Shown here piece after piece: positions 184 to 64,000 of a stretch of 64,000 nucleotides of DNA. A program made the position numbers and the translations under genes. Numbering within the stretch: position 1 is the stretch's first letter; each line of letters opens with the position of its first letter. The notes under the pieces were generated by a model that did no database searches, was not told where the DNA came from, and was given only the letters and a program-made list of their open reading frames with translations. This DNA is from Macrostomum lignano (Eukaryota), in the NCBI GenBank assembly GCA_002269645.1, contig NIVC01000477.1:111021-175020 (forward strand), written 5' to 3'.

Positions 184-24486
<24,303 letters not shown>

Positions 24487-31200: not shown

Positions 31201-31828
31201 TAGATTAGGTCTATATAGATGAGACAGAATTGTCTCTAGATTAACTCGATCACTAGATCAAACAGGATTGTCCCAAAACTAGTCTATAGATGAGACAGGA
31301 TTGTCTCTAGATTAAGTCAATAGATCAAACAGGATTGTCTCTAGATTAATTCAATAGACACAGCAGAACTGTCTCTAGATCGAGCCTACAGACTCTCACC
31401 TGTTGCGCCAGCGCTTTGAACTCCTCTCTCTCCTCCTTAATCTTGTCCAACTCCCTACAGAGCACGCCGAGCGCTTCGCATTTGCTCACTAATTTTCTTT
31501 TACAGACGTACAGCTCGTTTTTCAAGTTGAACTCAGCAGCAGACTGATGATGATAGTTGTAGGCGGACAGGAGGTCCCCAGTTCGAGACCCGTTCGGGCT
31601 GGAGTAGCGTCGTAGCCGCTGGAACAGCCGCCGATGAAGGGCCGGCCGACCTCCGGCAGCTGAGCTAGCCTGACTGTTCAAGGACTCGCCAGACATCTGC
31701 TTCTGCTGCTGCTGCTGCAGGCAATGGTTATCCGACAGATCAGGGAATAGTGCCCGCTTATCCTGGCTCCTGTCGCTGCTGTCCATGCCCACGTTTGAGT
31801 AGCCAGCAGTGGGCGCAGCATGTGGCAT
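27352..31828 (-). CDS. CCDC149: Coiled-coil domain-containing protein 149 (DUF2353 family)
   Basis: Exons 31828-31400, 30214-29717, 28728-28375 and 27654-27352, all joined in phase 0. Diagnostic segments: LKNELYVCKRKLVSKCEAL, ILDIDAVVMENRYLQERL, VSKYKSMLE, KNLALTHQRKANRLLAERVADLE. The start Met is uncertain. Confidence 0.92.
27680..28374. repeat. (CTAA)n microsatellite filling a CCDC149 intron
   Basis: Direct. Confidence 0.98.
28900..29640. repeat. TC-rich (ctcccttctcc)n tract
   Basis: Direct. Confidence 0.92.
30240..31380. repeat. Two adjacent arrays: (gatgtctata/gatgtctat)n at 30240-30920 and degenerate gtctctagattaa units at 31040-31380
   Basis: Direct. Confidence 0.9.
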
Positions 31829-32389
31829 GCGGGGGCTTTGGAGGATCCGACCTTCTTCAGCTTTCAAAGCTCTCCCTCTAGCCTTGAAGTAGGCATAGCC
31901 AGCCAGCAATATGGAATTGAATTGAATTGAAAAAGAAAATCGATCTATTAATATTTTAGCAGGGTGCAGCTCGGCTGGGGAAGGGGGGGTCCCCACACAC
32001 TTTTGTCTCCTTGAATTGACAAACCGACTGTTCAAAAAGAATTTTCCAGATCGATACAGGCAAGGGGTGAGACAGGGGGGGGGGGGAAACTGCACTCAGC
32101 AATTCTTCGTACGTTCAAGTGGACTGAAGGGCGTTTGCTATTTTTAGAAGCAAGTTCTATGCGATTTGTTATAACGCGACGAATTTTTAAACAATGAAAA
32201 ACATTTATTTTATTTTGCGTACTAAAAGTAGCCAGTACCGAAAGTTTATTAAATAAATTTTCGATATTTTACTAACAGTAGTGTAGAATGAAACGCTTAG
32301 TTAAAAACATAACAACTTAAATTTCAAGCATACTTTTCTAGACACTTTCCTGTTAAACTTTTCATTTGAAGTCTTAAATCTCAAAAAAT

Positions 32390-39377: not shown

Positions 39378-42300
39378 TTACAGTCTTTGCTCATCTGCAG
39401 CCTCGTCTTCGGCATATCCAATTAAATCTTGCAATATTCCAACGCCAGGCGACTGACTGCTGCAGCAGCAGTAGCTCGGAGCGCCGCTGGAAGATGCGCC
39501 GCTGCCGCCGCCCGCGCCGCAGACGCCACAACCGACGCGATTGCAGGCGTGAGGCGCCTGCGACACGGCCTCGGGATCGAAATTGAGCACGATTAATTTG
39601 GCATCCTCGGAGCCGTTTCTGGAGCCGGCGGCGCACACCAGGCGCGTGTCGGAGGCGCAGATGCGCCAGACGACGCCGCCGTGACCGGCTGACTCCAGGC
39701 GGAGCAGGTCGCGCACAAATTGACCAGTGGTGGCGCTCCACATTTTCACCTGAGGCAGATAATTATAATAATAGTAAATATACTTTTTATAAATAATCAG
39801 CTTTTTGGCTTTTAGCATACCAACTTTAATAATATGGCAAGTCAGATTTTTGGTTGAAATCTCAGAACCGAAATCCCAGAATCCAATCCCGGAATCCAAA
39901 TCCCAGAATCCAATCCCAGAATCCAAATCCCAGAATCCAAATTCCAGAATCCAATCCCAGAATCCAAATCCCAGAATCCAAATAGCAGAATCCAATCCCA
40001 GAATCTAATCCCAGAATCCAATCCCAGAATCCAAATCCCAGAATCCAAATCCCAGAATCCAAATCCCAGAATCCAATCCCAGAATCCAATCCCAGAATCC
40101 AATCCCAGAATCCAAATCCCAGAATCCAAATCCCAGAATCCAAATTCCAGAATCCAAATCCCAGAATCCAAATTCCAGAATCCAAATCCCAGAATCTAAT
40201 CCCAGAATCCAATCCCAGAATCTAATCTCAGAATCCAATCCCAGAATCCAAATCCCAGAATCCAAATCCCAGAATCCAATCTCAGAATCCAAATCCCAGA
40301 ATCCAATCCCAGGATCCAAATCCAGAACTCAAATCTCAGAATCCAAACTCCAAAGATCTTTAGAAATCCCATTCATAATAAAATCCCAAAATCCAAATCT
40401 TTAAGGTCTTAAGAAATCCCATCCATAATAAAATCCCAAAATCTAAATCTCTAAGATCTTCAGTATTCCCATCAATAATAAAATCCCAAATCGAAATCTG
40501 TAAGATCTTCAGAAATCCCATTCATAATAAAATCCCAAAATCTAAATCTCTAAGATCTTCAGAAATCCTATCCATAATAAAATCCCAAATCAGGCAGCTC
40601 ACCGTCCCATCATCGGATGCGGACACAATAAAATCCTGCACAATCTGCACAGAGGTGATGGCGCTCTGGTGCTTGTCCTGGCCGCCAAGACCCAGCACGT
40701 GCTGGCACTGGCCGGTGCTCAGATCCCACACTCGCAGGGTGGTGTCGGCATTGCCGCTGACCAGCCTACCATCCGGCAGCACCAGCATGCCAGCCGTCAG
40801 AGACTGATGCCCCAGCAAAGTTCGAATTAGTTGACCATCCGAACTGCGCCAAACTCGAATCGTAGTATCTAAGGAGCCGGACATAATGTACTGAGGCGTG
40901 GCCGCCAGAGTGTACACCCGGTTGATATGCTGATCTAGCACGTACTTGCAGTAGTACGGACCTCGGCTACTGGGCTCGATACACCAGACTCGGACTGTGC
41001 TGTCGTAGCTAGCGGACACCAGCTCGCTGTCCGACAGCCACTGCACCGCCCTGACCGCGGCCCGATGCCCGTGCAGTACAACTTGACAAGCCCCTGTGTG
41101 CAGATCCCACACTCTCAAGCTGGTGTCTCTAGAACCGCTAGTCACGTGACTGCCTCGGCCTGCTAAACAGCGAACTGTGCTCACGTGACCAGCTAGAGTG
41201 TGCCGACAAATGCCAGTCTTCATGCACCAGACCCGGACTGTGCGATCTGTGCTGCCAGAGACCAGCAGGTCGTCGACAATGGCGGTGGACCAGACGCCGC
41301 CAATGTGACCAGTGAGGGTTCGCACCTGCGATGGTTTACGATGCTTTCTCAGAGTTAAGAACGCCATTGTCTATCTAATCATTCATATCTATCTAATAAA
41401 CTCGATTGAAGATATTGACCAAATCTAAATATGCCGAGTTTAGTAAAGAAACTCGGTCTCAGTGTGATCACTGAAAGTATCAGATGAGGCTCTAAGCATC
41501 CCCATAAAGCATCAGATGAGGGTGTCAGCATCCCCATAAAGCATCGGATGAGGGTGTCAGCATCTCCATAAAGCATCAGATGAGGGTGTCAGCATCTCCA
41601 TAAAGCATCAGATGAGGGTGTCAGCATCTCCATAAAGCATCAGTTGAGGGTGTCAGCATATCCATAAAGCATCAGATGAGGCTCTAAGCATCCCCAAAAA
41701 GCATCAGATGAGGGTGTCAGCATCCCCATAAAGCATCAGATGAGGGTGTCAGCATCTCCATAAAGCATCAGTTGAGGCTCTAAGCATCCCCATAAAGCAT
41801 CAGATGAGGGTGTCAGCATCTCCATAAAGCATCAGTTGAGGGTGTCAGCATCTCCATAAAGCATCAGATGAGGCTCTATGCATCCCCATAAAGCATCAGT
41901 TGAGGCTCTAAGCATCCCATAAAGCATCGGATGAGGGTGTCAGCATCCCCATAAAGCATCAGATGAGGGTGTCAGCATCCCCATAAAGCATCAGATGAGG
42001 GTGTCAGCATCCCCATAAAGCATCAGATGAGGGTGTCAGCATCCCCATAAAGCATCAGATGAGGGTGTCAGCATCCCCATAAAGCATCAGATGAGGGTGT
42101 CAGCATCTCCATAAAGCATCAGTTGAGGGTGTCAGCATATCCATAAAGCATCAGATGAGGGTGTCAGGATCTCCATAAAGCATCAGATGAGGGTGTCAGC
42201 ATCTCCATAAAGCATCAGTTGAGGCTCTAAGCATCCCCATAAAGCATCAGATGAGGGTGTCAGCATCTCCATAAAGCATCAGTTGAGGGTGTCAGCATCT

Positions 42301-43472
42301 CCATAAAGCATCAGATGAGGCTCTATGCATCCCCATAAAGCATCAGTTGAGGCTCTAAGCATCCCATAAAGCCTCGGATGAGGGTGTCAGCATCTCCATA
42401 AAGCATCAGTTGAGGGTGTCAGCATCCCCATAAAGCATCAGATGAGGGTGTCAGACAGGCGGTCTCACCAGCTGCCCAGTATCCGCTCTCCACAGCCGTA
42501 TAGTAGAATCATCGCTAGCCGACACAATCAAATTGCGCCACATCTCCAAGCAGGTGATCACGTGATTATCGTGAGCAGGCAGCGTCAGCATGGAGGGCAG
42601 GGTTGCACCGGGCAGGCGGCAGGGCCCATTCACGGGTCGAGCGATTGACACTCCGCGCAGCCAGTTGCAACGCACCTGCCTAGCCCGCTGATAGGCCCGT
42701 TTGCCTCCCTGCCGGCGCCACAGATGAGGATCTTCCGCTAAGAGGCGCCAACGACGCGAGACTTGAGCGCAGACTAGCAGATCTCTTGGAGATAACTCGC
42801 CAAGAATCCTTAACGACAGCTCGGTGGGCAGGTGAGATACAAAGTCGCGCTTGAGCCGGGGCATCAGTGAGCAATGCAGGTGGATCAACTCCGGATGGGA
42901 GCATTTCGCTATCAGATTGGACAGCACGCAGAGGCGATCCTGAGGCGTCAGGGAGTCGAAAGTGTGCTCCCAGTCCGATCTGGGGGGGGGGGGGAGAATT
43001 CAGAACTAATAAATGGCTTTAACATTTGATTAATGAACTTAACTCAAAACTCTTTAATGCCAATTTAAATGCCACTATGAGATCCTGAACTGCCACTATG
43101 AGATCCTGAACTGCCAATCTGAGATCCTGAACTGCCAATCTAAGATCCTGAACTGTCACTATGAGATCCTGAACTGCCAATCTGAGATCCTGAACTGCCA
43201 CTATGAGATCCTGAACTGCCAATCTGAGATCCTGAACTGCCAATCTGAGATCCTGAACTGCTAATCTGAGATCTTGAACTGCCTATCTGAGATTCTGAAC
43301 TCCCAATCTGAGATCCCGATTCCCGAAACTGCCTATCTGAGATCCTGAACTCCCAATCTAAGATTTTAAACTGTCTATCTAAGATCCTGAATTCCGAACC
43401 TGAGATTGAAAAATGCACTTACTCAGTCTCTATCTTGAGCCTTTTCTTTTCAGGCTCATCTTCATCAGCCAT
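39378..43472 (-). CDS. FBXW7: FBXW7/SEL-10/archipelago-like F-box + WD40 protein (about 550 aa)
   Basis: Exons 43472-43423, 42979-42469, 41325-40603 and 39749-39378 (phases 2, 0, 0). D-domain plus F-box (RDFVSHLPTELSLRIL..AEDPHLW). WD40 motifs HDNHVITCL, GHIGGVWS, STVRCL, SGSRD, AAVRAV, NRVYTL, HQSAITS, GGVVWRICASDTRLVCAAGSRNG align with FBXW7. Confidence 0.93.
39870..40590. repeat. 13/14-bp array (cccagaatccaaat) grading into a 50-bp array
   Basis: Direct; last FBXW7 intron. Confidence 0.93.
41480..42455. repeat. 32-bp array (gcatcagatgagggtgtcagcatccccataaa)
   Basis: Direct. Confidence 0.96.
43070..43400. repeat. 21-bp array (gatcctgaactgccaatctga)
   Basis: Direct. Confidence 0.93.
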
Positions 43473-48456: not shown

Positions 48457-49269
48457 ATTTGCAATGACGGCAAATTGACAAAAATATTGTTTTTTAAAAT
48501 ACGTCCGTTTTATTCAAATATGTGCCTTCCTTTGTTTACCTGGTGACAATTCTGACCAGCAAACCATTCCAAATAGCGCAGCAATTATTGTTGCCCCTCC
48601 CTCTGATCACGAATATTTCCAAGCACATTTCTTCCTGGTGTTTCTTGGATAGCATTACTTTCGTTGTAACAAATTAATGACGAGTTCTTCTTTTACAAAA
48701 ATATTAACAATCTACACATTTTGTATTACAACCCCGCCTTGCATTCCAAGCTAAACTAAATATATAACTACTGTGCTTTACATTAATTTACTAAACATTC
48801 CCAGTTTATGTTCTATCTGGTGCTTAATTGTTGTCTTTTTTAAAAATGTCAGTAGGGAAAAATATTGCATTCGTCACGTGTTGCATCTGTGTAAAACAAA
48901 ACAATTGCTCCAACTTTCAAATTGCCTTTTTGTAAAAAAATATAGCTGGCACTCCCATCCATTTGTGCTATTCCTGATGTACTTTTGCCTAGGGAGACCT
49001 TTTGAATTCCTTATTATTGCTACTTAATTTTTACCTAATACGACGACTGTATTTTAAAAATAGTTTCAATTTTCCATTTATTGTTGTGTACTACTTAAAG
49101 TACTGTTTTGCTGGCATGCGAGACCAAAACTATTCATTAAATAAACTTTTATTTAATTTTATAATAGCATATATTGACGCAACAAATTAATTTGAGGACT
49201 TCCTGGGTTTAGCTGACTTCACAATCATTGCAATCAAAATCATTAACTGTCTGTCTGTCTATCTACTTC

Positions 49270-49514
<245 letters not shown>

Positions 49515-49861: not shown

Positions 49862-52800
49862 CTACATTATAGTCTTCTCCGAATAAACTGATCCGAGTCG
49901 AGAATTCCAGACTCTCGACCTGGCAGCCAGCATCAGACCAAAGCAAGCCGCCAGCAAAAGCAGCATCGAGGATGCTAAACTAATCAGCAGATAGTTTCCT
50001 CGATTCTCATGATCAGCATTATCATCGACCGTCATTCGACTTTTTGCAGTTTTCATTAGACAGAAAAATGACTTCAATCTGCGAGAAGCCGGCTTCATCG
50101 CTTCGTCCATGACAACGGGACTGCACGGATTTGTGAAGTTAATTAGTGACTTTTTTATTACGGTACCTGTTGAATCTTCGTCCAAAAATGAAAACGATCA
50201 TGATTTCGATATTAGAACTAAATTATTAACATGATAATATGTATGGAGGTTGTAATGTAAGGCATAACTGCAGGAGAACAAGAAACCATTATTAAAGCGA
50301 AAAAACGTTCGACTTTTTCAACCATTACAGACTCACCTGTCTAAGCCTCGTCTGATGAAAATTTCACCAACGTCGTCGTGCCTCCCTGCTAGAAGTTCCG
50401 TGGATCCCGGCTGCAACCTCCTGCGGCACTCCGCCAGCGCCAGGCGGGGACTGACTGCTCGTACCATCAAAGCGCAGCCTGCTGACGGCTCCGACTTTGA
50501 CAGCAGTAGCGGTCGGAGCGGCGGTGGGCAGCGACGATCGCCAGCAGCTTCGAGCGACTCAACGGAATCCACTGGCTGCCGATGTCGTCGCTGAGGCGCC
50601 TTGCAAAGGTGAAAGTGTCGCGCCTCTGGTTGGTACGTCCGCCACACCAGCCTCGGTCGAGCGTCCATCAGGAAGCCGAAGTTCATAGGCGGGTTGCTGG
50701 GACCGACCAGCCAGTTTCTGAAAGGGGGAGATTCTGCATGTACAGTATTTAATAATGATCTGTTTCAGGTTGTGTCCGTTTTTGTATATTACATAAACTC
50801 ACACGCTGACATTAACGCTCGTGTTGTCCTTGAGCCACTTGAACTTCCCTCCGTCTGCCTCGTCTCTGTACAGTCCGGTCCACGCTGCGTCTCCTTGAAA
50901 CCTGCAGTCTCGGCACTGAGCTCTGTAGTCTTCTCTGAGTCTCCAGTTCCTTGCTGAGTAGTCAGTAACCCAGTCCATCTCGGCTTGAGAATCGATCCAG
51001 AGCAGGTGAGCAGACGGGTCTCGTCTCTGACAGTCAGACACGGCCTCGGTGAGGTTCCTTCCATTGGATCCCTTGACCAGGAGGTAGCAGAAGCCATTGA
51101 ATTGCAGCCAGTCCTGTGACGGACAGGCCCCTTGAAGAGCTGTGGTTGTGGTTGGCATAACGGTGGTTGTTTCAGGTGTCGACTGCAGAGTAGTAAGATC
51201 TTGAGTAGTGGGTGGCACAGTAACAATTTCATAAGTTGTTGTCGGCTCCCTTGTTGCGATAGTTGTTGTTGCTGTCGCAACAGTGGGTGCCGTTGTGCTG
51301 ACAAACACAGGCGCTTTGCAGAAGTGATAGTGCTTGGCTTCAGGCGAGTAGGTTCGGAAGTACAAGTCGTTCGTTGTTTCATAAATATAAGCGTAATTTT
51401 TCGGTGGATTTTGAGGATCTATAAAAAACCATCGCCTAAAGTGAAAGGAAACTCGTCGAATAGAAACGGGTTGAATCATACCGATTCACCGAAAAACAAG
51501 AAGTTTACATTCACTTACCCAATGACATTCACTTTGGAGTTGTCCCTGAGCCACTTAAACCTTCCTCTGTCCGTTTCATTTCTGTACAGTCCGGTCCATG
51601 CGGCGTCTCCCAGCTGCCGGCAGTCTCGGCACTGAGCTCTGTAATCTTCTCTGAGTCTCCAGTTCCTTGTTGAGAAGTCCATCACCCAGTCCATCTCGGC
51701 TTGAGAATCGATCCAGAGTAGGTGAGCAGACGGGTCTCGTCTCTGACAGTCAGACGCGGCCTCGGTGAGGTTCCTTCCGTTGGATCCCTTGACCAGGAGG
51801 TAGCAGAAGCCCTTAAACTGTAGCCAGTCCTCTGACAGACATGAACCTTGAGGGATTTCTGATTTTTTAGTAGTCAACCCCATAGTAATCGAAGTCTGCC
51901 GCTCAGAAATCGTAGGTTCTAAAGTGACAGTTTCAGCAGTTTTTGTCGGCAATGACAAGCTAGACAATGGCGGCATCGTGGAAGATGATGGTGTTGCGCT
52001 GACAAGCTTAGGTGCTTTGCAGAAATGATAAAAGTTTAATCCTGATATAGAGGTTCGAAAGTACAAGTTGTTCAACGATTCATAAATGTAGCCATAGTTT
52101 CTGGGTGGATAAGCAGGATCAAAGACGAACCATTCTCTGAAATGACGACAGACGACATATTTGGCTTTTGAAAATAGCGAATCCTTTATGCCACTTTGAA
52201 ACAGGCTTCGAAGCTTTTCTGTCGGCATTTACATGAAAAATCAAGCAAAATTTTCTAGAATGCCTCGTAAAAAGACGCTGTCTATATGAAATATTTCTTA
52301 AAAGATAGCTAGCTGTAATGTGACATTACAAAGATTAATATTTCATTGACTGTTTTAGCATCTCCCATTTATCATAAATAGCACTATGGATACATCTTTA
52401 AGGACATTTACTGTTTACTCAAATTAAACTCAAAAGTTTGCAACTGCAAAATAAACAACCTGCAAATATAAACTATATCTAGCCTTAAGACATGCAAATC
52501 ATGCAAAAATAGGTATTTTTACGATAGAAAAGCAACGATTATGTTATTTACAGCCGTTTCAATCAAAATTTCCTAGCGAAGTTATTTATGAAAATCATCC
52601 GCAAAAAACAGGTAAAATAATAGGTGCAAACAAGTAAAGCGATCTCACACTGTGACTTCCAAATTTGAGTTGTCCCTGAGCCACTTGAAATTCCCACCAT
52701 CTGCCTCGTCTCTGTACAGTCCGATCCACGCTGCATCTCCTTGATGCCTGCAGTCTTGGCACTGAGCTCTGTAGTCTTCTCTGAGTCTCCAGTTCCTTGC

Positions 52801-53070
52801 TGAGAAGTCCATCAACCAGTCCATCTCGGCTTGAGACGTGACCCAGAGCAGGTGAGCAGACGGGTCTCGTCTCTGACAGTCAGACACGGCCTCGGTGAGG
52901 TTCCTTCCGTTGGATCCCTTGACCAGGATGTAGCAGTTGCTCCCGTATGACAACCAGTCGGTAGGGCAGTCAACGGCGTCTGCAGCCTGGTGACACAGCT
53001 GTAGGCTCAGCATCATCAGCAGCCACAGTGTGAATGCATATCCTAAAGCTTTAGCTTGTCCCCTATTCAT
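49862..53070 (-). CDS. Lectin gene B: signal peptide - 3 atypical C-type lectin domains with S/T linkers - degenerate CTLD - TM - short tail (about 775 aa)
   Basis: Exons 53070-52649, 52136-51519, 51435-50803, 50717-50368 (or 50337) and 50166/50175-49862. Motifs CP..DW..F.G.CY, A.SDC, AAWTGL, FKWL.DNS, HFCK. TM segment YLLISLASSMLLLLAACFGLMLAA. The last junction needs the weaker donor at 50367. Confidence 0.8.
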
Positions 53071-53873
53071 ATTCAGAGTTCTTCTGTACAGCAAACTAGA
53101 CCTTATACTTGTAGCGCACAGTATTTGCCTGCTTCAGTTAGCCTTGACACCTGATTTAACATTGAGCTATAGCCCGACTTATTAGTTGCTACTTTTTACA
53201 GTGCTGCCACCAGTTGCGAATAGTTAAATAACTTAAATAATTGAAAGGAGAGATTCTCCTCGCTGATAAGATACGGGTATCGTGATTCTGCCCTTCCTAA
53301 GGAACATTAAAAGGCTAAATGTGTGTCGTCCTTGTGCGTAAAGACTGTGCCTTATTACTTACGAGTAATACATGTAGCTAGTTTATCCCAGATTTATTGC
53401 GAGGTATAGAAAATCCAATAGCAAAATAGCATATGAAAATCGAACCTCCACCATTGGTTCAGATTCGCTAGAAAAAAGTCAAACAACAAAGTTGAATGGC
53501 TAAACAAAAATATACGCCAGTCTATTTTTATGTGTTTACTTGTTTTGCTTGTTATACATTTACTGCATATGCAATAAAATAATTTATTGCTCATTTTCAC
53601 GTCATCAATTGGTGTGTACTTAAGTTTTTAAAATCCTAGCAGAAAAGCCAAAATGACCAGACTGGCCAGCAGACAGCGCACACAACCCGCCTGACATCTC
53701 GCTGCAGACCGCGGAAGAGACGCCTCGACGCCGCAGAAGAAGGTGCGAAGCCGACGCCGCCTCGCCAATTGGTTGCCACGAAAACTGCGGGCAGGCAACG
53801 CGGCGGATTCGAGACTCAATGAATCGGTCAGGCAAATCCGTAACAAAAAATCGCATCGGCTCTTGAAACTCAC

Positions 53874-56800
53874 CTGGCGAAAGGTTTAGCAAAGTCCACG
53901 CGCCTCCCCACCAGAAGTGCCGTGGACCCCGGCTCCAACCTCCTGCGGCACTCCGCCAGCGCCAGGCGGGGGCTGACTGCTCGTACCGTCAAAGCGCAGG
54001 CTGCTGACGGCTTCGACTTTGACAGCAGCAACGGTCGGAGCGGCGGCAGGCACCGGCGATCGCCAGAAGCTTGGAGTGACTCAACCGAATCCAGTGGTTG
54101 TCGATGCCGTCGCTGAGGCGCCTTGCAGAGGTGAAAGTGTCGCGCCTCTGGTTGGTACGTCCTCCACACCAACCGCGGTCGAGAGTCCATCAGGAAGCCG
54201 AAGTTCATGGGCGGGTTGCTGGGACCGACCAGCCAGTTTCTGTAAGGTCAGAGATTTTATATTAGTGATTCGTTTTAGGGTGTTTCCGTTCATCTTTATG
54301 GCAGTAAAGCTCACACGCTGATGTTGACAATGCCATTTTCCATGAGCCACTTAAACTTCCCTCCGTCTGCCTCGTCTCTGTACAGTCCGGTCTACGCTGC
54401 GTCTCCTTGAAACCTGCAGTCTCGGCACTGAGCTCTGTAGTCTTCTCTGAGTCTCCAGTTCCTAGCCGATGTGTCCATCACCCAGTCCATCTCAGATTGA
54501 GACGTGACCCAGAGCAGGTGAGCAGACGGGTCTCGTCTCTGACAGTCAGACACGGCCTCGGTGAGGTTCCTTCCGTTGGATCCTTTGACCAGGAGGTAGC
54601 AGAAGCCCTTAAACTGCAGCCAGTCCTGTGACGGACAGGCACGTCGAGGAGCTGTGGTGGTCGTTAGCATAACGGTAGTTGTTTCAGGTGTCGACTGCAG
54701 AGTAGTTAGGTTTGGACTAATCGTTGGCAAAGTAACAATTTCATGAGTTGTTTTCGGCTCCCTTGTTGCAATAGCTGTTGTTGCTGTCGCACCAGTGGGG
54801 GCTGTTGTGCTGACAAACACAGGCGCTTTACAGAAGTGATAGTGCTTGGATTCAGGTGAGTAGGTTCGGAAGTACAAGTTGTTTACTGTTCCATAAATGT
54901 AGCCATAGTTTCTTGGTGGATTACCTGGCTCTAAAAAAACCAATTCCTGAAAGGAATGAAATTTACTTATGTTTGAAATGGAGCTAAAGCCAATTGTAAG
55001 AACTATAAGCAAATTTAAATGCATCACTTACACGGTAACATCTAGATTGGAGTTATCAATGAGCCACTTGAAATTCCCTCCGTCTGCCTCGTCTCTGTAC
55101 AGTCCGGTCCAGGCGGCATCTCCCAGGTTCCTGCAGTCTCGGCACTGAGCTCTGTAGTCTTCTCTGAGTCTCCAGTTCCTTTCTGAGTAGTCGGTAACCC
55201 AATCCATCTCGGCTTGAGACGTGACCCAGAGCAGGTGAGCAGACGGGTCTCGTCTCTGACAGTCAGACACGGCCTCGGTGAGGTTTCGTCCGTTGGATCC
55301 CTTGACCAGGAGGTAGCAGAAGCCTTTAAACAGCTGCCAATCCACTGATGGGCATGAACCCTCGTTCTCGTTGGGCCGTGTTGTTTCCTCTGCAATAAAT
55401 TATACACAGGTCTAGAAACAAAAAAGTATTTTCAACTTTCAGTTTTTTAACTTCAAAGCTGAATCTAAATCCTGCTAGTTAATTGCTTTGCCGTAGACTT
55501 TTCATTTATGTTATTTTGTCATACGTTTTTAGTAGGTCTTTCTGTCGTGAATTCTGATAGTGCTCCTGTCGATTGCTCGGTTTGTAGATTCATTCGTCGG
55601 TCTGTTGTTGATTCAGTCCAATTGAAAACTGAAGAAATCGTTGTAAATTTTGTTGTTTGTCGTTCTGTTTTATCTGTTTGTAGTTCTGTCAATATCTTTT
55701 TGTTGTTCCATTTATCTTTACTGCTGTTTTTTCCGTCAATCGTTTTCTTGTTGATTCGGAAGAAATTTCTGTTGTTGGTTGTGTGAAGCGTTCTATTTGT
55801 CCTCTCATTGATCGTTTCGTTTGTGGTTCTGTGTCTTGTTACGAGCTATTCTTTATCCTGTTATCCTGTTATTTTTTTGTCAGTATATTTGTTTTTTATT
55901 CCGTAAGTTTGTCTGTTGTGTTGGTTCCGTGAATAGTTCTGTTGCTGATTTTGACGATGTGCTGTTGTTTGTTGTGTTGATCGTTCTTGTTGATGTGGTT
56001 CTGTCTATCCTTCTGTTATTCATATCGTCAGTCTCTCTGTTACGAGAGCATTGATTCCGTCAACAGTTCGGCTTTTCGTTCCGTTGACGGTGCTAAAGCT
56101 ATTGTTGGTCACTTTTTCGATCGTTCTGTTGAGGGTTTTATCGGTGGCTCCGTATTTTTTCTGTACTCGACACTGTCGTGTATTCGGTCGATTGTTTTGC
56201 TGTAGACGCCAGTGCTGTTGTTATTTTTTAGCCAGCTACTTCTATTATATTTTTGCACAAAAGTGGAGTTATGAGTGGAGTGTAGTGTATGAAGGCTAAC
56301 TCACTTTTGAGACAAAAAAGGTTAATAATAACCCCATTTCGCATTGTAATTTGGCCCCTGTATTTTTGGGTCGTCATGCTCACTTAAGGCGGCATGTTTA
56401 GGCATCAACGGCTGTCATTATAATGAGTCTCTATGGGGTCCATAGGTGGCGTCATAGAAACGCCATAATCTGAATGAACTACTTCTGACAAACGTTTTGA
56501 ACGTACCAATATGTCGAGTGCCTAAATAAGTGACAGTGTCCTCAAATCCACCAGGCTTCTGAACGATCACGCTCAGATTGTACTCAAGACCTGTGTGCAA
56601 ATTTTTGCATGTAGCCATCGGAACCGTCGATTTGACAACTGTGACATCGCTGTTAGTGCCGACACGACTGCAGGTGAGCGCGTAGGTGACTGCTGGAGTG
56701 TTGGACTCCGACCAGCTCACTGTAATTCCAGTCTCGTACACCGCGTATTGAACTTTGTTGACATCTATGGGGAATAGTTCTGAAATTTTGTTTTGCAAAT

Positions 56801-59123
56801 ACATGTCCACTGAAACAGGTATGGAGGTCATCATGAACGTAGCAACGAAAGTGCACAAAATTCAAATTGCGGTTTGAACAACATTCGAAAAACACGAATA
56901 TTGTTTTTCGCAACAACTTTTGCCAAGGCAAAGGTGGCAGTTCCAATAATTACATTAGGGCTTTAGTGCATTTCTGGCTCGGGAAAACAAAAGTATAGCT
57001 ACATGGTGCTACAGAATATTCTTACGAAAAAACAAGGCATTATAATTATTGAAAGTCAATTAGAAATAAGCTTATAACATGCACTTAAATAAAATCTTTT
57101 ATATTGAAATTTCTAGAATGTACTTTTAGCGTGATTGCTTACAAATGTCTCTTTTTCCCCAAAGCATGCAATTTTTACAAAAATAGATTATGGCACCGAA
57201 ATATTGCTAATAACTGCTTACTGGTAAGCGCCGTGCCTCGAACATAACTAGACTGAGGAAATCCCGGCTTCACAGTTCGAACTGTCACATCGATGCTGGC
57301 GCCAGATTGCAGATTGCTGCACAGGACACTGTCGCCATCGACAATTCCTGCGCAGCTGACTTCGTAACGGATGCCAACATCGGGCGACGGAACCCAATGG
57401 ACTCGAAAACTGGTCTCATCAATGTCAGAGAAGTGCAACGGCTCTGGTAGATTGCTGAGGGCTGACGATATGAGGCTTCGAGTTAGTACTTATTTGTTAG
57501 ATATTTATCAATTAAACGAGACTATCATGCAACTGCCGCGTGAAATCACGCCATCGGTAGCGCGGCGATTCAAGGTCAAATGCTAAATAAGGCAGAACTG
57601 CCACGCACAGTGCGCGTGATCTATGGGTAAACAAAACCAAGGTATCCTCGTTCAGTTACGTGCACATGAATTTGGTGCTTGTGCCTTAACATTACGAGCG
57701 TATAACTACCAAGGGGATTCCCCCCCCTGACATTTTTTGCTGCACCGGAACGGAGCAATGCAGGCACACAGAACTCCAGAACGTCGAGATTTTTAACGAT
57801 TCTACCAGAAGGTCGGATTTATTGATTTTCCTTGTATTGCATGATTTAATAATGTACGTGCTTTATTCAGTTCGCTATGTACGCTGATTGAGCCCAGGCC
57901 CATTACACCCACCCCCTCCGCGCTGGCTGATATTCTGACTGACTGCAAATAAATATATCATCGAGAGGGCTTGCTAGCCCTATGTACAGTTTACGGTTTA
58001 CGTTTCGTTTTGTTATCATCTCGCATGAGCCTCAGCTCCAGATAGTTTGGCGGACCATCGGTCTCTTCATTTCTACAGTACACCTTCAACAGGTGGCAAC
58101 AGATGACTATGGACACCCTGTTGCAAATTTCTTTAGTTTCGCTGATCAAGCCTTGATAGTGAGCAAGCCTCAACTGCTGGACATCCTCAGCTAGTCTTTC
58201 AAACATTCCGTCATCACCCCGACGCCGTCAGCACCTTCAACAGGTGGCACCAGGTGACTATGGACACACTGTTGCAAATGTCTTCGATGTCGCTGACCGA
58301 GCATCAGTAATGGGCAAACTTCAACTCCTGGTACGAGAATTCTCAACCTGTTGAAGGCAGAATCGTCGAATATCTCGACGGTCCGGAGGGCTGGCGATTT
58401 GATTCTTGTTTGAGAAGTTGTGCGCAACAAAAAGTTTGTCCGTGTTCTGGAGTTTCGTGTGCCTGAGTTGCATCGTTCTGGCGCAGTAAAAACAATTGTG
58501 TCCCCCCTTGGTAACTCGACGGGTGGAAAGATGGTTTGCCATTCCGCTGTTAAAATTGACATTTGGGCAATTCTCGCCTATGAAGGTCAGAGGTCAGGCC
58601 CCAAGGCTGACACAAGGTATGTACATTGCCTGATGATAAGAAAGTCAGGGCTGCTGAACACCCTGTGTTAGTGCCCGCCTGCGTACACATCTGTCCCCAG
58701 TAACAAAAACCCGTGTTCAACTTGCCTTATGCTTCACTCTGTCTCACCTGTCTTGGCATTCAAAACGTAGGACGGACTCAATTCGCAGTCGCGATGCCCA
58801 GCCTGCAGCAACACCACGTATTCCATGGCGGGAATCAATCCGGAAAATTTGTACGTGGTACCCGAGGTGGTGATTTGCTGTTCGTGACCTGTACAGCCGG
58901 GACAACTGAGCACGTAGTAAAAGTCCCATAGCTCCGGTACGGTCGATGGCTGCAGCCAATCGACAATGATTTCCGACACAGTTGATCGACGAACAATCGC
59001 TAGGGTGATTTTGTCGACTTGGTTTGGGTTGGCAACGCCGCACCTGATGTTTGCCTGCACATTTGAGCTAATTAAACAGCAGCTCAGGATTAAAAAGCAT
59101 GAGAGATTCCAGTTCGAGCTCAT
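53874..59123 (-). CDS. Lectin gene A: signal peptide - 3 FN3 - CTLD - Thr-rich linker - CTLD - degenerate CTLD; disrupted as assembled, 3' end unresolved
   Basis: Exons 59123-58748, 57443-57222, 56809/56779-56507 and 55389-55032 are joined in phase 1. Exons 54946-54315 and 54239-53874 are joined in phase 2. FN3 hallmarks: V.W....Y.L.C; L.P.xEY.V. Exon 54946-54315 has a 1-nt loss in a T-run and a TGG>TAG change at 54392-54394. Confidence 0.72.
57709..58511. mobile_element. Candidate non-autonomous element (MITE-like) with degenerate long inverted ends
   Basis: TA-CCAAGGGG ... CCCCTTGG-TA termini. 57720-57805 is an imperfect reverse complement of 58360-58510. A related partial copy lies at about 34930-35310. 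Confidence 0.45.
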
Positions 59124-61102: not shown

Positions 61103-64000
61103 TTAAATGACGCTTGTTTTCATCGCATCGCTACCAACTGGTTCCATCGACACAGAGACAGAGGTTGGTGTGTCCAATTGAATATTAGAAATTCCGTTAC
61201 GCGTCACGTGACTTGCGTCGTCTAAGAATCCGCCATTGACGGCCGACTGCGCAGCACCTGCAGCCTGTGCGGAGGCAAAGAATTTGAAGTAGATAACGGC
61301 AGCAGCAACTGCTGCAGCTACGACAGAGACCGAGCTGATCCAGATGATGTGCACGTACAGCATTGGTAAACCGCCCTCTGGCTGAGTCAGATCAGAGCTG
61401 GTGACAATTGTGGTGCTGTCTAAACCTGAAGTTGAAGCCCGGCTCGCTGTTGTTGAATGCCGCATCGTAATTGAAGTATCTTGACTGTCCGAAGTCGTCA
61501 GTGTTGACTGTACAAGGGTGGTTTCCATTCTCGAGGTAATGGGTGATGCTACGGTGGTTTCGGAAGCTGTTTGACTCGATGTAGGTTCCGTTGTTTGAGC
61601 AGTGCTAATTTTTTCTGCAGTTGACGGGCTTGTTGACGTCCTGAGTGTAAAATCTGTCGGTGATGATGTTGTCTGGCTCTGTGTTGCCTCTGGTGTTGTC
61701 TGGCTCTGCGTTGCCTCTGGTGTTGTCTGGCTCTGCGTTGCTTCTGGTGTTGTCTGGCTCTGCGTTGCTTCTGATGTTGTCTGGCTCTGCGTTGCCTCTG
61801 GTGTTGTCTGGCTCTGCGTTGCTTCTGATGTTTTCTGGCTCTGCGTTGCTTCTGGTGTTGTCTGGCTCTGCGTTGCTTCTGATGTTGTCTGGCTCTGCGT
61901 TGCTTCTGGTGTTGTCTGGCTCTGTGTTGCCTCTGGTGTTGTCTGGCTCTGCGTTGCTTCTGGTGTTGTCTGGCTCTGTGTTGCCTCTGATGTTGTCTGG
62001 CTCTGCGTTGCTTCTGGTGTTGTCTGGCTCTGCGTTGCTTCTGGTGTTGTCTGGCTCTGCGTTGCTTCTGGTGTTGTCTGGCTCTGCGTTGCTTCTGGTG
62101 TTGTCTGGCTCTGCGTTGCTTCTGGTGTTGTCTGGCTCTGTGTTGCCTCAATTGTAGATTCAGTCGGTGTTGTGTCTGGTGTCGACTGGCTCTGCGTTGA
62201 TTCGATTGTAGACTCATTCGGTGTTGTGTCTGGTGTCGACTGGCTCTGTGTTGTCTCAATTGTAGATTCAGTCGGTGTTGTGTCTGGTGTCGACTGGCTC
62301 TGTGTTGCCTCAATTGTAGATTCAGTCTGTGTTGTGTCTGGTGTCGACTGGCTCTGTGTTGTCTCCATTGTAGATTCAGTCAGTATTGTGTCTGGTGTTG
62401 AATGACTCTGTGTTGCCTCAATTGTAGATTCAGTCGGTGTTGTGTCTGGTGTCGACTGGCTCTGCGTTGATTCGATTGTAGACTCATTCGGTGTTGTGTC
62501 TGGTGTCGACTGGCTCTGTGTTGTCTCAATTGTAGATTCAGTCGGTGTTGTGTCTGGTGTCGACTGGCTCTGTGTTGCCTCAATTGTAGACTCATTCGGT
62601 GTTGTGTCTGGTGTCGACTGGCTCTGTGTTGTCTCAATTGTAGATTCAGTCGGTGTTGCGTCTGGTGTCGACTGGCTCTGTGTTGCCTCTTGTGTCGACT
62701 GGCTCTGTGTTGTCTCAATTGTAGATTCAGTCGGTGTTGTGTCTGGTGTCGACTGGCTCTGTGTTGTCTCAATTGTAGATTCAGTCTGTGTTGTGTCTGG
62801 TGTCGACTGGCTCTGTGTTGTCTCAATTGTAGATTCAGTTGGTGTTGTGTCTGGTGTCGACTGGCTCTGTGTTGCCTCAATTGTAGATTCAGTCTGTGTT
62901 GTGTCTGGTGTCGACTGGCTCTGTGTTGCCTCAATTGTAGATTCAGTCTGTGTTGTGTCTGGTGTCGACTGGCTCTGTGTTGCCTCAATCGTAGATTCAG
63001 TCGGTGTTGTGTCTGGTGTCGACTGGCTCTGCGTTGATTCGATTGTAGACTCATTCGGTGTTGTGTCTGGTGTCACTGGCTCTGTGTTGCCTCAATTGTA
63101 GATTCAGTCTGTGTTGTGTCTGGTGTCGACTGGCTCTGCGTTGATTCGATTGTAGATCATTCGGTGTTGTGTCTGGTGTCGACTGGCTCTGTGTTGCCTC
63201 AATTGTAGATTCAGTCTGTGTTGTGTCTGGTGTCGACTGGCTCTGTGTTGCCTCAATTGTAGATTCAGTCTGTGTTGTGTCTGGTGTCGACTGGCTCTGT
63301 GTTGCCTCAATTGTAGATTCAGTCGGTGTTGTGTCTGGTGTCGACTGGCTCTGTGTTGCCTCAATCGTAGATTCAGTCGGTGTTGTGTCTGGTGTCGACT
63401 GGCTCTGCGTTGATTCGATTGTAGACTCATTCGGTGTTGTGTCTGGTGTCCACTGGCTCTGTGTTGCCTCAATTGTAGATTCAGTCTGTGTTGTGTCTGG
63501 TGTCGACTGGCTCTGCGTTGATTCGATTGTAGACTCATTCGGTGTTGTGTCTGGTGTCGACTGGCTCTGTGTTGCCTCAATTGTAGATTCAGTCTGCGTT
63601 GTGTCTGGTGTCGACTGGCTCTGTGTTGCCTCAATTGTAGATTCAGTCTGTGTTGTGTCTGGTGTCGACTGGCCCTGCGTTGATTCGATTGTAGACTCAT
63701 TCGGTGTTGTGTCTGGTGTCGATTGGCTCTGTGTTGCCTCAATCGTAGATTCAGTCGGTGTTGTGTCTGGTGTCACTGGCTCTGTGTTGCCTCAATTGTA
63801 GATTCAGTCTGTGTTGTGTCTGGTGTCGACTTGCTATATGTCGTATAATCAGCTAGTATTGTGGCAGACGTTGTAACACTTGAGCTAGAAGTAGGCCAGT
63901 TTGTGTTGTAGACTCGATGTCACTAATGTTGTCGATTCTGTTGTTAGGATATTCGTTGTTGTTGGCGTATGCGTTGGCGCTGTTGTGCTAACAAACACAG
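61103..64000 (-). CDS. Lectin/mucin gene C (3' part): Ser/Thr-rich mucin stalk + TM + cytoplasmic tail; 5' end outside the window; frameshifted as assembled
   Basis: Repeats of 18 aa (54 bp, STPDTTxTESTIEATQSQ) and 9 aa (27 bp, TTPEATQSQ). TM segment IIWISSVSVVAAAVAAAVIYF; C-terminus TSVI. The window end reads PVFVSTTAPT, the post-CTLD linker of genes A and B. 1-nt losses near 63774, 63156 and 63074. Confidence 0.8.

What the first reader, a model, noticed from the sequence alone, without database searches (positions are those of the whole stretch)
49862..55389. Split C-type lectin cassette array: potential combinatorial receptor diversification
Seen: five CTLDs, each cut by a phase-2 intron at the same place (after W L.DNS...V). 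Internal exons (52136-51519, 618 nt; 51435-50803, 633 nt; 54946-54315, 632 nt) encode the C-half of domain n, an S/T linker and the N-half of domain n+1, with phase 2 at both ends. N-halves are nearly identical. C-halves carry the long-loop region and differ (EWFVFDPAYPP..SISGLNFYH; RWFFIDPQNPP..YSPEAKHYH; NWFFLEPGNPP; NWLVGPSNPP..RPRLVW). Any N-half donor can therefore splice in frame to any downstream C-half, and unequal crossover adds or removes whole cassettes. Known: CTLD long loops determine ligand specificity, and invertebrates diversify receptors by splicing or duplication (Dscam, FREPs). Inference: a modular lectin/mucin surface-recognition system for immunity, mucus or adhesion.
Basis: partly seen in the sequence, partly recalled or inferred. 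Interest (0 to 1): 0.75.

Follow-up and report, generated by a model that had tools for sequence, protein, structure and literature searches.

The report
Flatworm split C-type-lectin repeat gene pair
This stretch of Macrostomum lignano (flatworm) DNA holds two neighbouring genes of a lineage-specific family of membrane glycoproteins, built from repeated lectin-like domains that an old intron splits at the same spot. The layout shows how the family gains and loses repeats, but I found no evidence for the proposed Dscam-like combinatorial splicing.

Summary
They are not one array. They belong to two tandem genes on the minus strand of Macrostomum lignano DNA.

- **Gene B (53070-49862):** an intact 770-aa type I membrane protein with a signal peptide, three CTLDs joined by Ser/Thr/Pro linkers, a degenerate half-domain stalk and a TM segment. 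All four introns are phase 2.
- **Gene A (59123-53874):** three FN3 exons plus two CTLDs and no TM exon. In this assembly its 632-nt cassette carries a 1-nt deletion and a TGG>TAG stop, so it cannot have phase 2 at both ends.
- **Domain identity:** the CTLD fold is confirmed (AlphaFold pLDDT 88; Foldseek top hits DCIR, CEL-I, CD23). The canonical Ca2+/sugar motifs and the C2-C3 disulfide are absent.
- **Sequence divergence:** N-halves are 74-89% identical in protein, not nearly identical. dN/dS is about 0.2-0.3 in both halves, so there is no diversifying signal.
- **Family-wide features:** the same intron position occurs in distant paralogs with 1 and 7 CTLDs. A ~95%-identical second copy of the locus holds one fused 3-CTLD gene, so cassette gain and loss is supported.
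- **Combinatorial splicing:** nothing supports it. The one apparent skipped model has a non-canonical junction inside the repeat.

Ordinary; low interest.

The parts
52649..53070 (-). Gene B exon 1 (422 nt): ATG at 53070, signal peptide (MNRGQAKALGYAFTLWLLMMLSLQLCHQAADA), N-half of CTLD B-D1. The donor is GTGAGA, phase 2.
   Evidence: Gene model. The 5' part resembles exon 1 of the upstream CTLD-mucin gene of L001.
51519..52136 (-). Gene B exon 2 (618 nt, phase 2 to 2). It encodes the C-half of B-D1 (EWFVFDPAYPP...), a 56-aa linker (50% S+T+P) and the N-half of B-D2.
50803..51435 (-). Gene B exon 3 (633 nt, phase 2 to 2). It encodes the C-half of B-D2 (RWFFIDPQNPP...), a 61-aa linker (52% S+T+P) and the N-half of B-D3.
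50337..50717 (-). Gene B exon 4 (381 nt, phase 2 to 2). It encodes the C-half of B-D3 (NWLVGPSNPP...) plus a stalk that looks like a degenerate N-half of a further CTLD.
   Evidence: hhalign of the tail to the CTLD profile gives E 0.073 for gene B and E 3.5e-4 for the paralog P0005, in the same register.
49862..50120 (-). Gene B exon 5. It encodes the juxtamembrane segment, the transmembrane helix (residues ~729-747), a 19-aa cytoplasmic tail and the TAG stop at 49864-49862.
   Evidence: Kyte-Doolittle maximum 2.35 at residue 729.
56507..59123 (-). Gene A exons 1-3 (59123-58748, 57461-57222, 56779-56507). They encode the signal peptide and three FN3 domains, with phase-1 introns.
   Evidence: Together with exon A1 they give 415/415 residues identical to M. 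lignano UniProt model P0002.
55032..55389 (-). Gene A exon 4 (A1, 358 nt, phase 1 in, phase 2 out): N-half of CTLD A-D1.
54315..54946 (-). Gene A exon 5 (A2, 632 nt). It encodes the C-half of A-D1, a linker and the N-half of A-D2. It is disabled in this assembly by a T7 run instead of T8 at 54939-54933 (frameshift) and by TAG instead of TGG at 54394-54392.
   Evidence: The intact equivalent is in L001 and in model P0002.
53874..54239 (-). Gene A exon 6 (A3, 366 nt). It encodes the C-half of A-D2 (NWLVGPSNPP...) plus the stalk, and its C-half is 95% identical in DNA to that of gene B exon 4. No TM exon follows.
53071..53873 (-). A-B spacer. It has no counterpart in L001. It contains AATAAA at 53588-53583 and an AG at 53085-53084, 14 nt before the ATG of gene B (a possible trans-splice acceptor; this is inference).
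   Evidence: Part of the spacer (53788-53681) appears as an exon in the independent model P0004.

Best explanation
The region is part of a small tandem cluster of a Macrostomum-specific gene family. The family encodes heavily glycosylated type I membrane proteins whose ectodomain is a string of divergent C-type lectin-like domains joined by mucin-like Ser/Thr/Pro linkers.

An old phase-2 intron splits every CTLD just before the long-loop/beta3-beta5 part. Each internal exon is therefore a symmetric (2-2) cassette: C-half, linker, next N-half. Unequal recombination and gene conversion between these similar cassettes add, delete and homogenise repeats, and can split or fuse genes. That explains the differences between this locus, its ~95%-identical second copy and the paralogs.

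The exons are most likely spliced constitutively.
- **Gene B** is the intact product: signal peptide, 3 CTLDs, stalk, TM.
- **Gene A** (FN3x3 + 2 CTLDs) has lost its TM exon. In this assembly it carries a frameshift and a stop, so it is probably a decaying duplicate.

What is shown and what is inferred:
- Shown: the gene anatomy, the fold, the loss of the canonical Ca2+/sugar site and the variation in cassette number.
- Inferred: constitutive splicing, and a cell-surface or glycocalyx adhesion/recognition role that does not use canonical Ca2+-dependent sugar binding.
For: **Gene models and context**
- Gene models have GT-AG introns and uninterrupted reading frames.
- The units are confined to 55384-49865.
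- All close relatives are M. lignano proteins.

**Domain identity**
- The CTLD profile hits only CTLDs in the PDB, with E down to 2e-9.
- The AlphaFold model has pLDDT 87.9, and the Foldseek top 50 are all CTLDs with TM 0.6-0.8.

**Architecture**
- Linkers are 50-52% S+T+P, each N-half carries an NLT sequon, and the TM hydropathy peak is clear.

**Family-wide pattern**
- The same intron position occurs in the 34%-identical 7-CTLD paralog and in the 1-CTLD paralog.
- Two metagenome ORFs end exactly at that site.
- L001 is colinear at ~95% but holds one fused 3-CTLD gene.
- L002 has a duplicated cassette.

**Exchange between units and selection**
- In nt 91-135, N-half A1 is identical to Lc, whereas its positional ortholog La is closest to B1.
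- dN/dS is about 0.2-0.3 in both halves.
Against: - No transcript data for this locus could be reached, so constitutive splicing is assumed, not shown.
- Gene B exons 1-2 are not represented in any public protein model found, so expression of gene B is unproven.
- The frameshift lies in a homopolymer and could be an assembly error. The UniProt model P0002, identical over the first 415 residues, reads this exon intact.
- Pfam Lectin_C does not match, not even at E<=1.
Confidence: 0.7

Rival explanations
1. One reading: the symmetric half-domain cassettes are used combinatorially. Exon skipping between non-adjacent phase-2 junctions would generate a repertoire of receptors with different C-half (long-loop) specificities.
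For: - All CTLD-region junctions of gene B and of L001 are phase 2, so any skip keeps the frame.
- C-halves diverge more than N-halves.
- In L002 an intact-looking duplicate cassette (6331-6834) is left out of the annotated transcript model.
Against: - Gene B has only two internal cassettes, so at most 4 forms are possible.
- Frame symmetry is a precondition for any tandem exon duplication to survive, so it is not evidence of alternative use.
- dN/dS of C-halves (0.19-0.45) is no higher than that of N-halves.
- Synonymous divergence is also higher in C-halves. This points to homogenisation of N-halves rather than selection for C-half diversity.
- The 3' end of each N-half co-varies with its partner C-half type (KFKWL...VNxSV with NWLVGPSNPP in 4 of 4).
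- There are no docking/selector complementarities.
- The one 'skipped' model, P0001, has a non-canonical junction inside the repeat and comes from a short-read pipeline.
Confidence: 0.1
2. Genes A and B are one transcription unit. There are two versions. In the first, two alternative 5' modules (the FN3 module with its promoter, and the signal-peptide exon B1 with its own start) share the single TM exon at 50120-49862. In the second, a polycistronic precursor is resolved by spliced-leader trans-splicing at the AG 14 nt before the ATG of gene B.
For: - Gene A has no TM exon of its own.
- The A3 donor is phase 2, like the TM-exon acceptor.
- The L001 copy is a single gene in which the FN3 module is joined to the TM exon.
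- The gene model P0004 joins A and B exons.
- About 7% of M. lignano transcripts are multi-gene precursors and about 39% of genes are trans-spliced (PMC5730564).
Against: - Gene A is interrupted by a frameshift and a stop in this assembly.
- P0004 is a prediction that threads out-of-frame pieces.
- An AATAAA lies 285 nt after A3.
- There is no transcript evidence either way.
Confidence: 0.15
3. The two-gene arrangement, or its lesions, is an assembly artefact produced by mixing near-identical copies of a neopolyploid genome.
For: - M. lignano has 180 Mb of blocks that are at least 95% identical (PMC5730564) and is neopolyploid (PMC10733133, PMC5704211; abstracts).
- The frameshift sits in a T7/T8 run.
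- P0002 matches the window perfectly for 415 residues, then reads A2 intact and ends like L001.
Against: - The A-spacer-B order, including the spacer-specific 53788-53681 sequence, recurs in P0004. P0004 differs from the window at several residues, so it comes from another copy or assembly.
- Exon-intron structure is coherent throughout.
- TGG>TAG is a substitution, not a typical homopolymer error.
Confidence: 0.05

Closest known systems
Multi-CTLD type I receptors of the mannose-receptor family (MRC1, DEC-205/LY75, PLA2R, Endo180) and CD302
   Same: - Type I membrane topology.
- Several CTLDs in tandem.
- Most CTLDs lack a working sugar site.
- DEC-205 and CD302 are the best PDB sequence matches. 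MRC1-like vertebrate proteins are the next relatives in the library of 1.84 billion representative proteins.
   Different: - No ricin-type or FNII domain.
- The N-terminal module is FN3x3 in gene A or absent in gene B.
- Mucin-like linkers of 56-61 aa lie between the domains.
- The CTLDs lack the C2-C3 disulfide and carry an extra CxxC-containing helical insert.
- The cytoplasmic tail is very short.
Dscam1-type mutually exclusive exon clusters
   Same: Exons encode half-domains, and variable halves are joined to more constant halves. This comparison rests on my own knowledge of Dscam exon 4 and exon 6 clusters.
   Different: - Here the cassettes are serial modules, each carrying halves of two different domains. 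They are not alternatives for one slot.
- Including all of them gives the intact protein.
- There are only 2 internal cassettes per gene.
- No competing RNA pairing elements were found.
- No isoform evidence exists.
Repeat expansion by tandem duplication of symmetric exons (exon-shuffling rules; concerted evolution of repeat-encoding exons)
   Same: - Internal exons have the same phase at both ends.
- Copy number differs between paralogs and between duplicated loci.
- Sequence sharing between units is mosaic.
   Different: - The duplication unit is offset from the domain boundary because the intron lies inside the domain.
- The phase class is 2-2 rather than the 1-1 class typical of extracellular modules. 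The FN3 exons of gene A are 1-1.
Membrane-tethered mucins and invertebrate CTLD-mucin proteins
   Same: - Ser/Thr/Pro-rich linkers.
- A neighbouring family member with a long 18-aa tandem repeat, 54 bp x ~39 copies, at 61673-63835.
- Signal peptide and single TM segment.
   Different: The linkers in genes A and B are short, and the globular CTLDs dominate. No SEA, VWD or other mucin hallmark domains were detected.

Membership tests
C-type lectin-like domain (CTLD) superfamily | CTLD fold: two helices, two antiparallel sheets and a long-loop region | tested here: met
   The AlphaFold2 model of B-D2 has pLDDT 87.9 and pTM 0.85. The Foldseek top 50 PDB matches are all CTLDs (DCIR, CEL-I, BDCA-2, CD23, DC-SIGNR), with E down to 2e-8 and TM 0.6-0.8.
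C-type lectin-like domain (CTLD) superfamily | Sequence signature: WIGL-type motif, the C1-C4 cysteines (alpha1 to beta5) and the N-terminal hairpin cysteines | tested here: met
   AAW[TI]GL, C33, C148, C2 and C14 are invariant across 11 units. The profile hits DEC-205 at 2e-9, CD302 at 6e-8 and CLEC4A at 9e-7.
C-type lectin-like domain (CTLD) superfamily | Match to Pfam Lectin_C (PF00059) above the gathering score | tested here: not met
   There is no Lectin_C hit even at E<=1. The only hit is UL45 (a C-type lectin-like family) at 21.5 bits, below its cut-off of 27.
C-type lectin-like domain (CTLD) superfamily | C2-C3 disulfide (beta3 to the loop after beta4) | tested here: not met
   C-halves contain a single cysteine, in ..HFCK. 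A CxxC pair in the N-half insert is invariant instead.
Ca2+-dependent carbohydrate-recognition domain (C-type lectin proper) | EPN or QPD motif plus WND motif forming Ca2+ site 2 | tested here: not met
   In the alignment to langerin, the EPN position reads EPG, DPQ, DPA or GPS, and the WND position reads FRT (the alignment is weak, E 0.05). The result agrees with the alignment of 11 units.
Mannose receptor family (group VI CTLD proteins) | N-terminal ricin-type Cys-rich domain, FNII domain, then 8-10 CTLDs, a TM segment and an endocytic tail | tested here: not met
   No ricin or FNII domain was detected. There are 2-3 CTLDs. Only the tandem-CTLD, type I TM layout is shared.
Dscam-like mutually exclusive splicing array | A cluster of alternative exons that all encode the same protein segment, with exactly one used per mRNA | tested here: not met
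   The cassettes are serial and each spans two domains. Joining all of them gives an uninterrupted 770-aa ORF.
Dscam-like mutually exclusive splicing array | Docking-site and selector-sequence RNA complementarity in the introns | tested here: not met
   Only 8 short inverted repeats (14-28 nt, 71-93% complementary) were found, and no arm is shared by several partners.
Dscam-like mutually exclusive splicing array | Many isoforms observed in cDNA | not testable with these tools
   No transcript reads were reachable. Public models derive from short reads or ab initio prediction.
Repeat family evolving by symmetric-exon duplication | Internal exons with identical phase at both ends, and variable copy number among paralogs | tested here: met
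   Phase is 2-2 for the 618-, 633- and 381-nt exons. The same split occurs in L002 (7 CTLDs plus an extra duplicate cassette) and in L003 (1 CTLD). L001 has 3 CTLDs in one gene, against 2+3 in two genes here.

The most novel reading that the evidence does not exclude
The cluster is a small-scale isoform generator, in one or both of two ways.
- Regulated skipping of the symmetric half-domain cassettes yields hybrid CTLDs and variable domain number.
- Two alternative 5' modules (the FN3 module and the B1 signal-peptide exon) share the single TM exon, a miniature protocadherin/UGT1A-like variable-constant arrangement.

Either way, a flatworm-specific surface recognition repertoire would be produced.
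Probability: 0.1. Interest if true: 0.5.

Novelty: new member of a known kind. Interest (0 to 1): 0.25.

Why it matters
As it stands, this is a tidy textbook case.
- An intron inside a domain makes the duplication unit a 'C-half + linker + N-half' exon.
- Two ~95%-identical copies of the locus in a neopolyploid genome show repeat gain and loss, gene fission or fusion, and the onset of pseudogenisation.
- It documents a Macrostomum-restricted, non-canonical CTLD subfamily with a CxxC insert, no C2-C3 disulfide and no Ca2+ site. Pfam Lectin_C misses this subfamily.

It would matter more only if long-read cDNA showed regulated cassette choice. That would be an unusual way of making hybrid lectin-like domains.

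Tried and rejected
- **Pfam scan of the 770-aa product:** no Lectin_C hit. I turned to a profile of 11 units, AlphaFold and Foldseek instead.
- **Second word-index search with the CTLD alignment:** no hits. The exhaustive HMMER search replaced it.
- **Full-text search for the gene identifiers** Mlig027029, Mlig021682 and Mlig022912: 0 papers.
- **The 'C-type lectin' gene Mlig-tuf2** in PMC12732829: a different architecture (Ig-like + CLECT), and I could not tie it to this family.
- **P0001 as evidence of a skip** (N-half 1 joined to the last C-half): rejected. Its N-half is a chimera of N_a and N_c, joined inside the exon at a GG..AC 'intron'.
- **Nucleotide-level constraint on blocks of the N-half:** clustering of invariant third positions is only marginal, with permutation p 0.04-0.18. 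I do not claim it.
- **Search for docking/selector complementarities:** nothing beyond short, chance-level inverted repeats.
- **Tail of gene B as a degenerate N-half:** only weakly supported for gene B itself (E 0.073) and better for paralog P0005 (E 3.5e-4).

Full report
**What is there**

Everything lies on the minus strand. tblastn of the spliced product finds the repeated unit only between 55384 and 49865. Joining the exons at GT-AG sites gives two genes.

Gene B has five exons:
- 53070-52649
- 52136-51519 (618 nt)
- 51435-50803 (633 nt)
- 50717-50337 (381 nt)
- 50120-49862

Its four introns all fall after the second base of a codon. The product is 770 aa and consists of:
- a signal peptide
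- three ~150-aa domains separated by linkers of 56 and 61 aa that are 50-52% Ser+Thr+Pro
- a Cys-containing stalk
- one strongly hydrophobic segment (residues ~729-747)
- a 19-aa tail

Every N-half carries an NLT sequon.

Gene A starts at 59123. It has three FN3 exons with phase-1 introns (59123-58748, 57461-57222, 56779-56507). It continues with A1 (55389-55032), A2 (54946-54315) and A3 (54239-53874). Its first 415 residues are identical to the M. lignano UniProt model P0002, so the organism is Macrostomum lignano.

**Check of the observation**

The exon coordinates, the position of the intron and the 'C-half + linker + N-half' content of the internal exons are correct. Three points are not.

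1. Exon A2 is 632 nt, so it cannot be phase 2 at both ends.
   - It has 7 T (54939-54933) where the intact relative has 8. The quoted NWFFLEPGNPP therefore crosses a frameshift.
   - The Trp codon of the WTGL motif is TAG at 54394-54392.
2. Gene A has no TM exon.
3. N-halves are 74-89% identical in protein and 84-90% in DNA. C-halves are 36-95% identical, and A-D2 and B-D3 share one C-half type.

**Is it a C-type lectin domain?**

Pfam Lectin_C does not match. Other evidence places it in the fold:
- A profile of 11 units (5 from the window, 6 from paralogs) hits only CTLDs in the PDB: DEC-205 at 2e-9, CD302 at 6e-8 and CLEC4A at 9e-7.
- An AlphaFold2 model has pLDDT 87.9.
- The 50 best Foldseek matches of that model are all CTLDs, with TM 0.6-0.8.

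The fold and the WIGL/C1-C4 signature are therefore met. The C2-C3 cysteines are absent, and a CxxC-containing helical insert is invariant instead.

Aligned to langerin, the EPN position reads EPG, DPQ, DPA or GPS, and WND reads FRT (the alignment is weak). These are lectin-like domains without the canonical Ca2+/sugar site.

In the model the intron falls between beta2' and the W..xP start of the long-loop region. The C-half therefore holds the loop and beta3-beta5.

**Relatives and evolution**

An exhaustive HMMER search of 1.84 billion representative proteins finds about ten close relatives. They are M. lignano proteins plus two short metagenome ORFs that end exactly at the intron site. After these come only generic multi-CTLD proteins, from vertebrate MRC1-like and bivalve sources.

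The same split is present in:
- the gene of the 34%-identical, 7-CTLD paralog P0003 (L002)
- the 1-CTLD, FN3-containing paralog P0005 (L003)

L002 also contains an extra cassette that is 95.6% identical to its neighbour and absent from the annotated model.

L001, from assembly Mlig_3_7, is colinear with the window at ~94-95%. This fits the known neopolyploidy and the 180 Mb of blocks at least 95% identical (PMC10733133, PMC5704211). L001 holds one intact gene: FN3x3, three CTLDs, stalk and TM. Between two recent copies of the locus, cassettes have therefore been gained or lost, and a gene has been split or fused.

The 5' end of gene B resembles exon 1 of the upstream CTLD-mucin gene. The stalk after the last C-half looks like a decayed N-half.

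**Selection**

| Region compared | dS | dN | dN/dS |
|---|---|---|---|
| N-halves of different units | 0.16-0.43 | 0.05-0.12 | mostly 0.2-0.3 |
| Alignable C-halves within the window | 0.6-1.5 | 0.15-0.30 | 0.19-0.24 |

These are Nei-Gojobori estimates. The C-halves are only 42 codons, so their values are noisy.

Both kinds of change are lower in N-halves while the ratio is the same. This fits homogenisation of N-halves plus purifying selection. It does not fit diversifying selection on C-halves.

Exchange between units is visible directly. In nt 91-135, A1 is identical to Lc, while its positional ortholog La is closest to B1.

**Combinatorial splicing**

Frame compatibility is real, but any tandem exon duplication needs it to survive. 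Several observations argue against combinatorial use:
- Gene B could yield at most four skip forms.
- There is no docking/selector-like complementarity.
- The 3' end of each N-half tracks the type of its partner C-half.
- The one model that resembles a skip (P0001) is a chimera of two N-halves joined at a non-canonical site inside the exon. It comes from a short-read and BLAT pipeline.

I could not reach transcript reads, so this remains untested rather than refuted.

**Verdict**

This is an ordinary, lineage-specific pair of multi-CTLD, mucin-linked membrane-protein genes. Its split-domain cassettes explain repeat-number evolution. One copy is probably decaying. The combinatorial-receptor idea is unsupported.

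Noticed in passing
window 61673-63835 (minus strand ORFs 63791-61106): A 54-bp tandem repeat of about 39 copies encodes an 18-aa Thr/Ser-rich unit (TPDTTPTESTIEATQSQS). It corresponds to the mucin part of a third, upstream CTLD-mucin gene (1384-aa product at L001 2337-7184), which runs off the window end.
   Followed up: partly
L002 6331-6834: The 7-CTLD paralog gene contains an extra cassette exon with an open frame. It is 95.6% identical in DNA to the cassette at 3624-4353 but has a different C-half start. The annotated transcript model P0003 omits it. It could be a skipped exon, a pseudo-exon or an annotation collapse.
   Followed up: partly
L001 13714-15738 (model P0001): The NCBI model BOX15_Mlig027029g1 shows one CTLD where the DNA encodes three. 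Its N-half switches from copy N_a to copy N_c inside the exon at a non-GT/AG junction. This is a likely collapse of near-identical repeats in transcript assembly.
   Followed up: yes
window 53588-53583 and 53085-53084: An AATAAA lies 285 nt after the last exon of gene A, and an AG lies 14 nt upstream of the ATG of gene B. These could be a poly(A) signal and a spliced-leader acceptor of two separately matured mRNAs.
   Followed up: no
window 49250-49514: A (TCTA/GATA)n microsatellite of about 66 copies lies ~350 bp downstream of the gene B stop codon. A short (CCCAA)n run lies at about 49765-49745.
   Followed up: no
window 9988-11141 (+): A mariner/Mos1-type transposase remnant lies in two overlapping frames (HTH_48 at 1e-12, Transposase_1 at 4e-5), flanked by (TATC)n runs at 9722-9899 and 11209-11527.
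   Followed up: partly
window 40525-43000 (-): An F-box/WD40 gene has a 32-bp minisatellite (41474-42454, about 31 copies) between the WD40 and F-box exons. It is colinear with L001 at ~95%.
   Followed up: partly
window 29708-32095 (-): Exons of a CCDC149 homolog (Pfam CC149, 1.5e-35), flanked by CT-rich and 66-bp tandem repeats.
   Followed up: no
window 16764-18652: A 78-bp satellite of about 24 copies creates spurious open frames of 700-830 aa on the minus strand with no Pfam match. The window as a whole is packed with minisatellites (64 TRF rows with score >=300).
   Followed up: partly
proteins P0008, P0009 (JGI metagenome contigs of 1.1-1.6 kb): Two environmental ORFs look like single cassette exons of this family and end exactly at the conserved intron site. 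This suggests related flatworm DNA in metagenomes.
   Followed up: no
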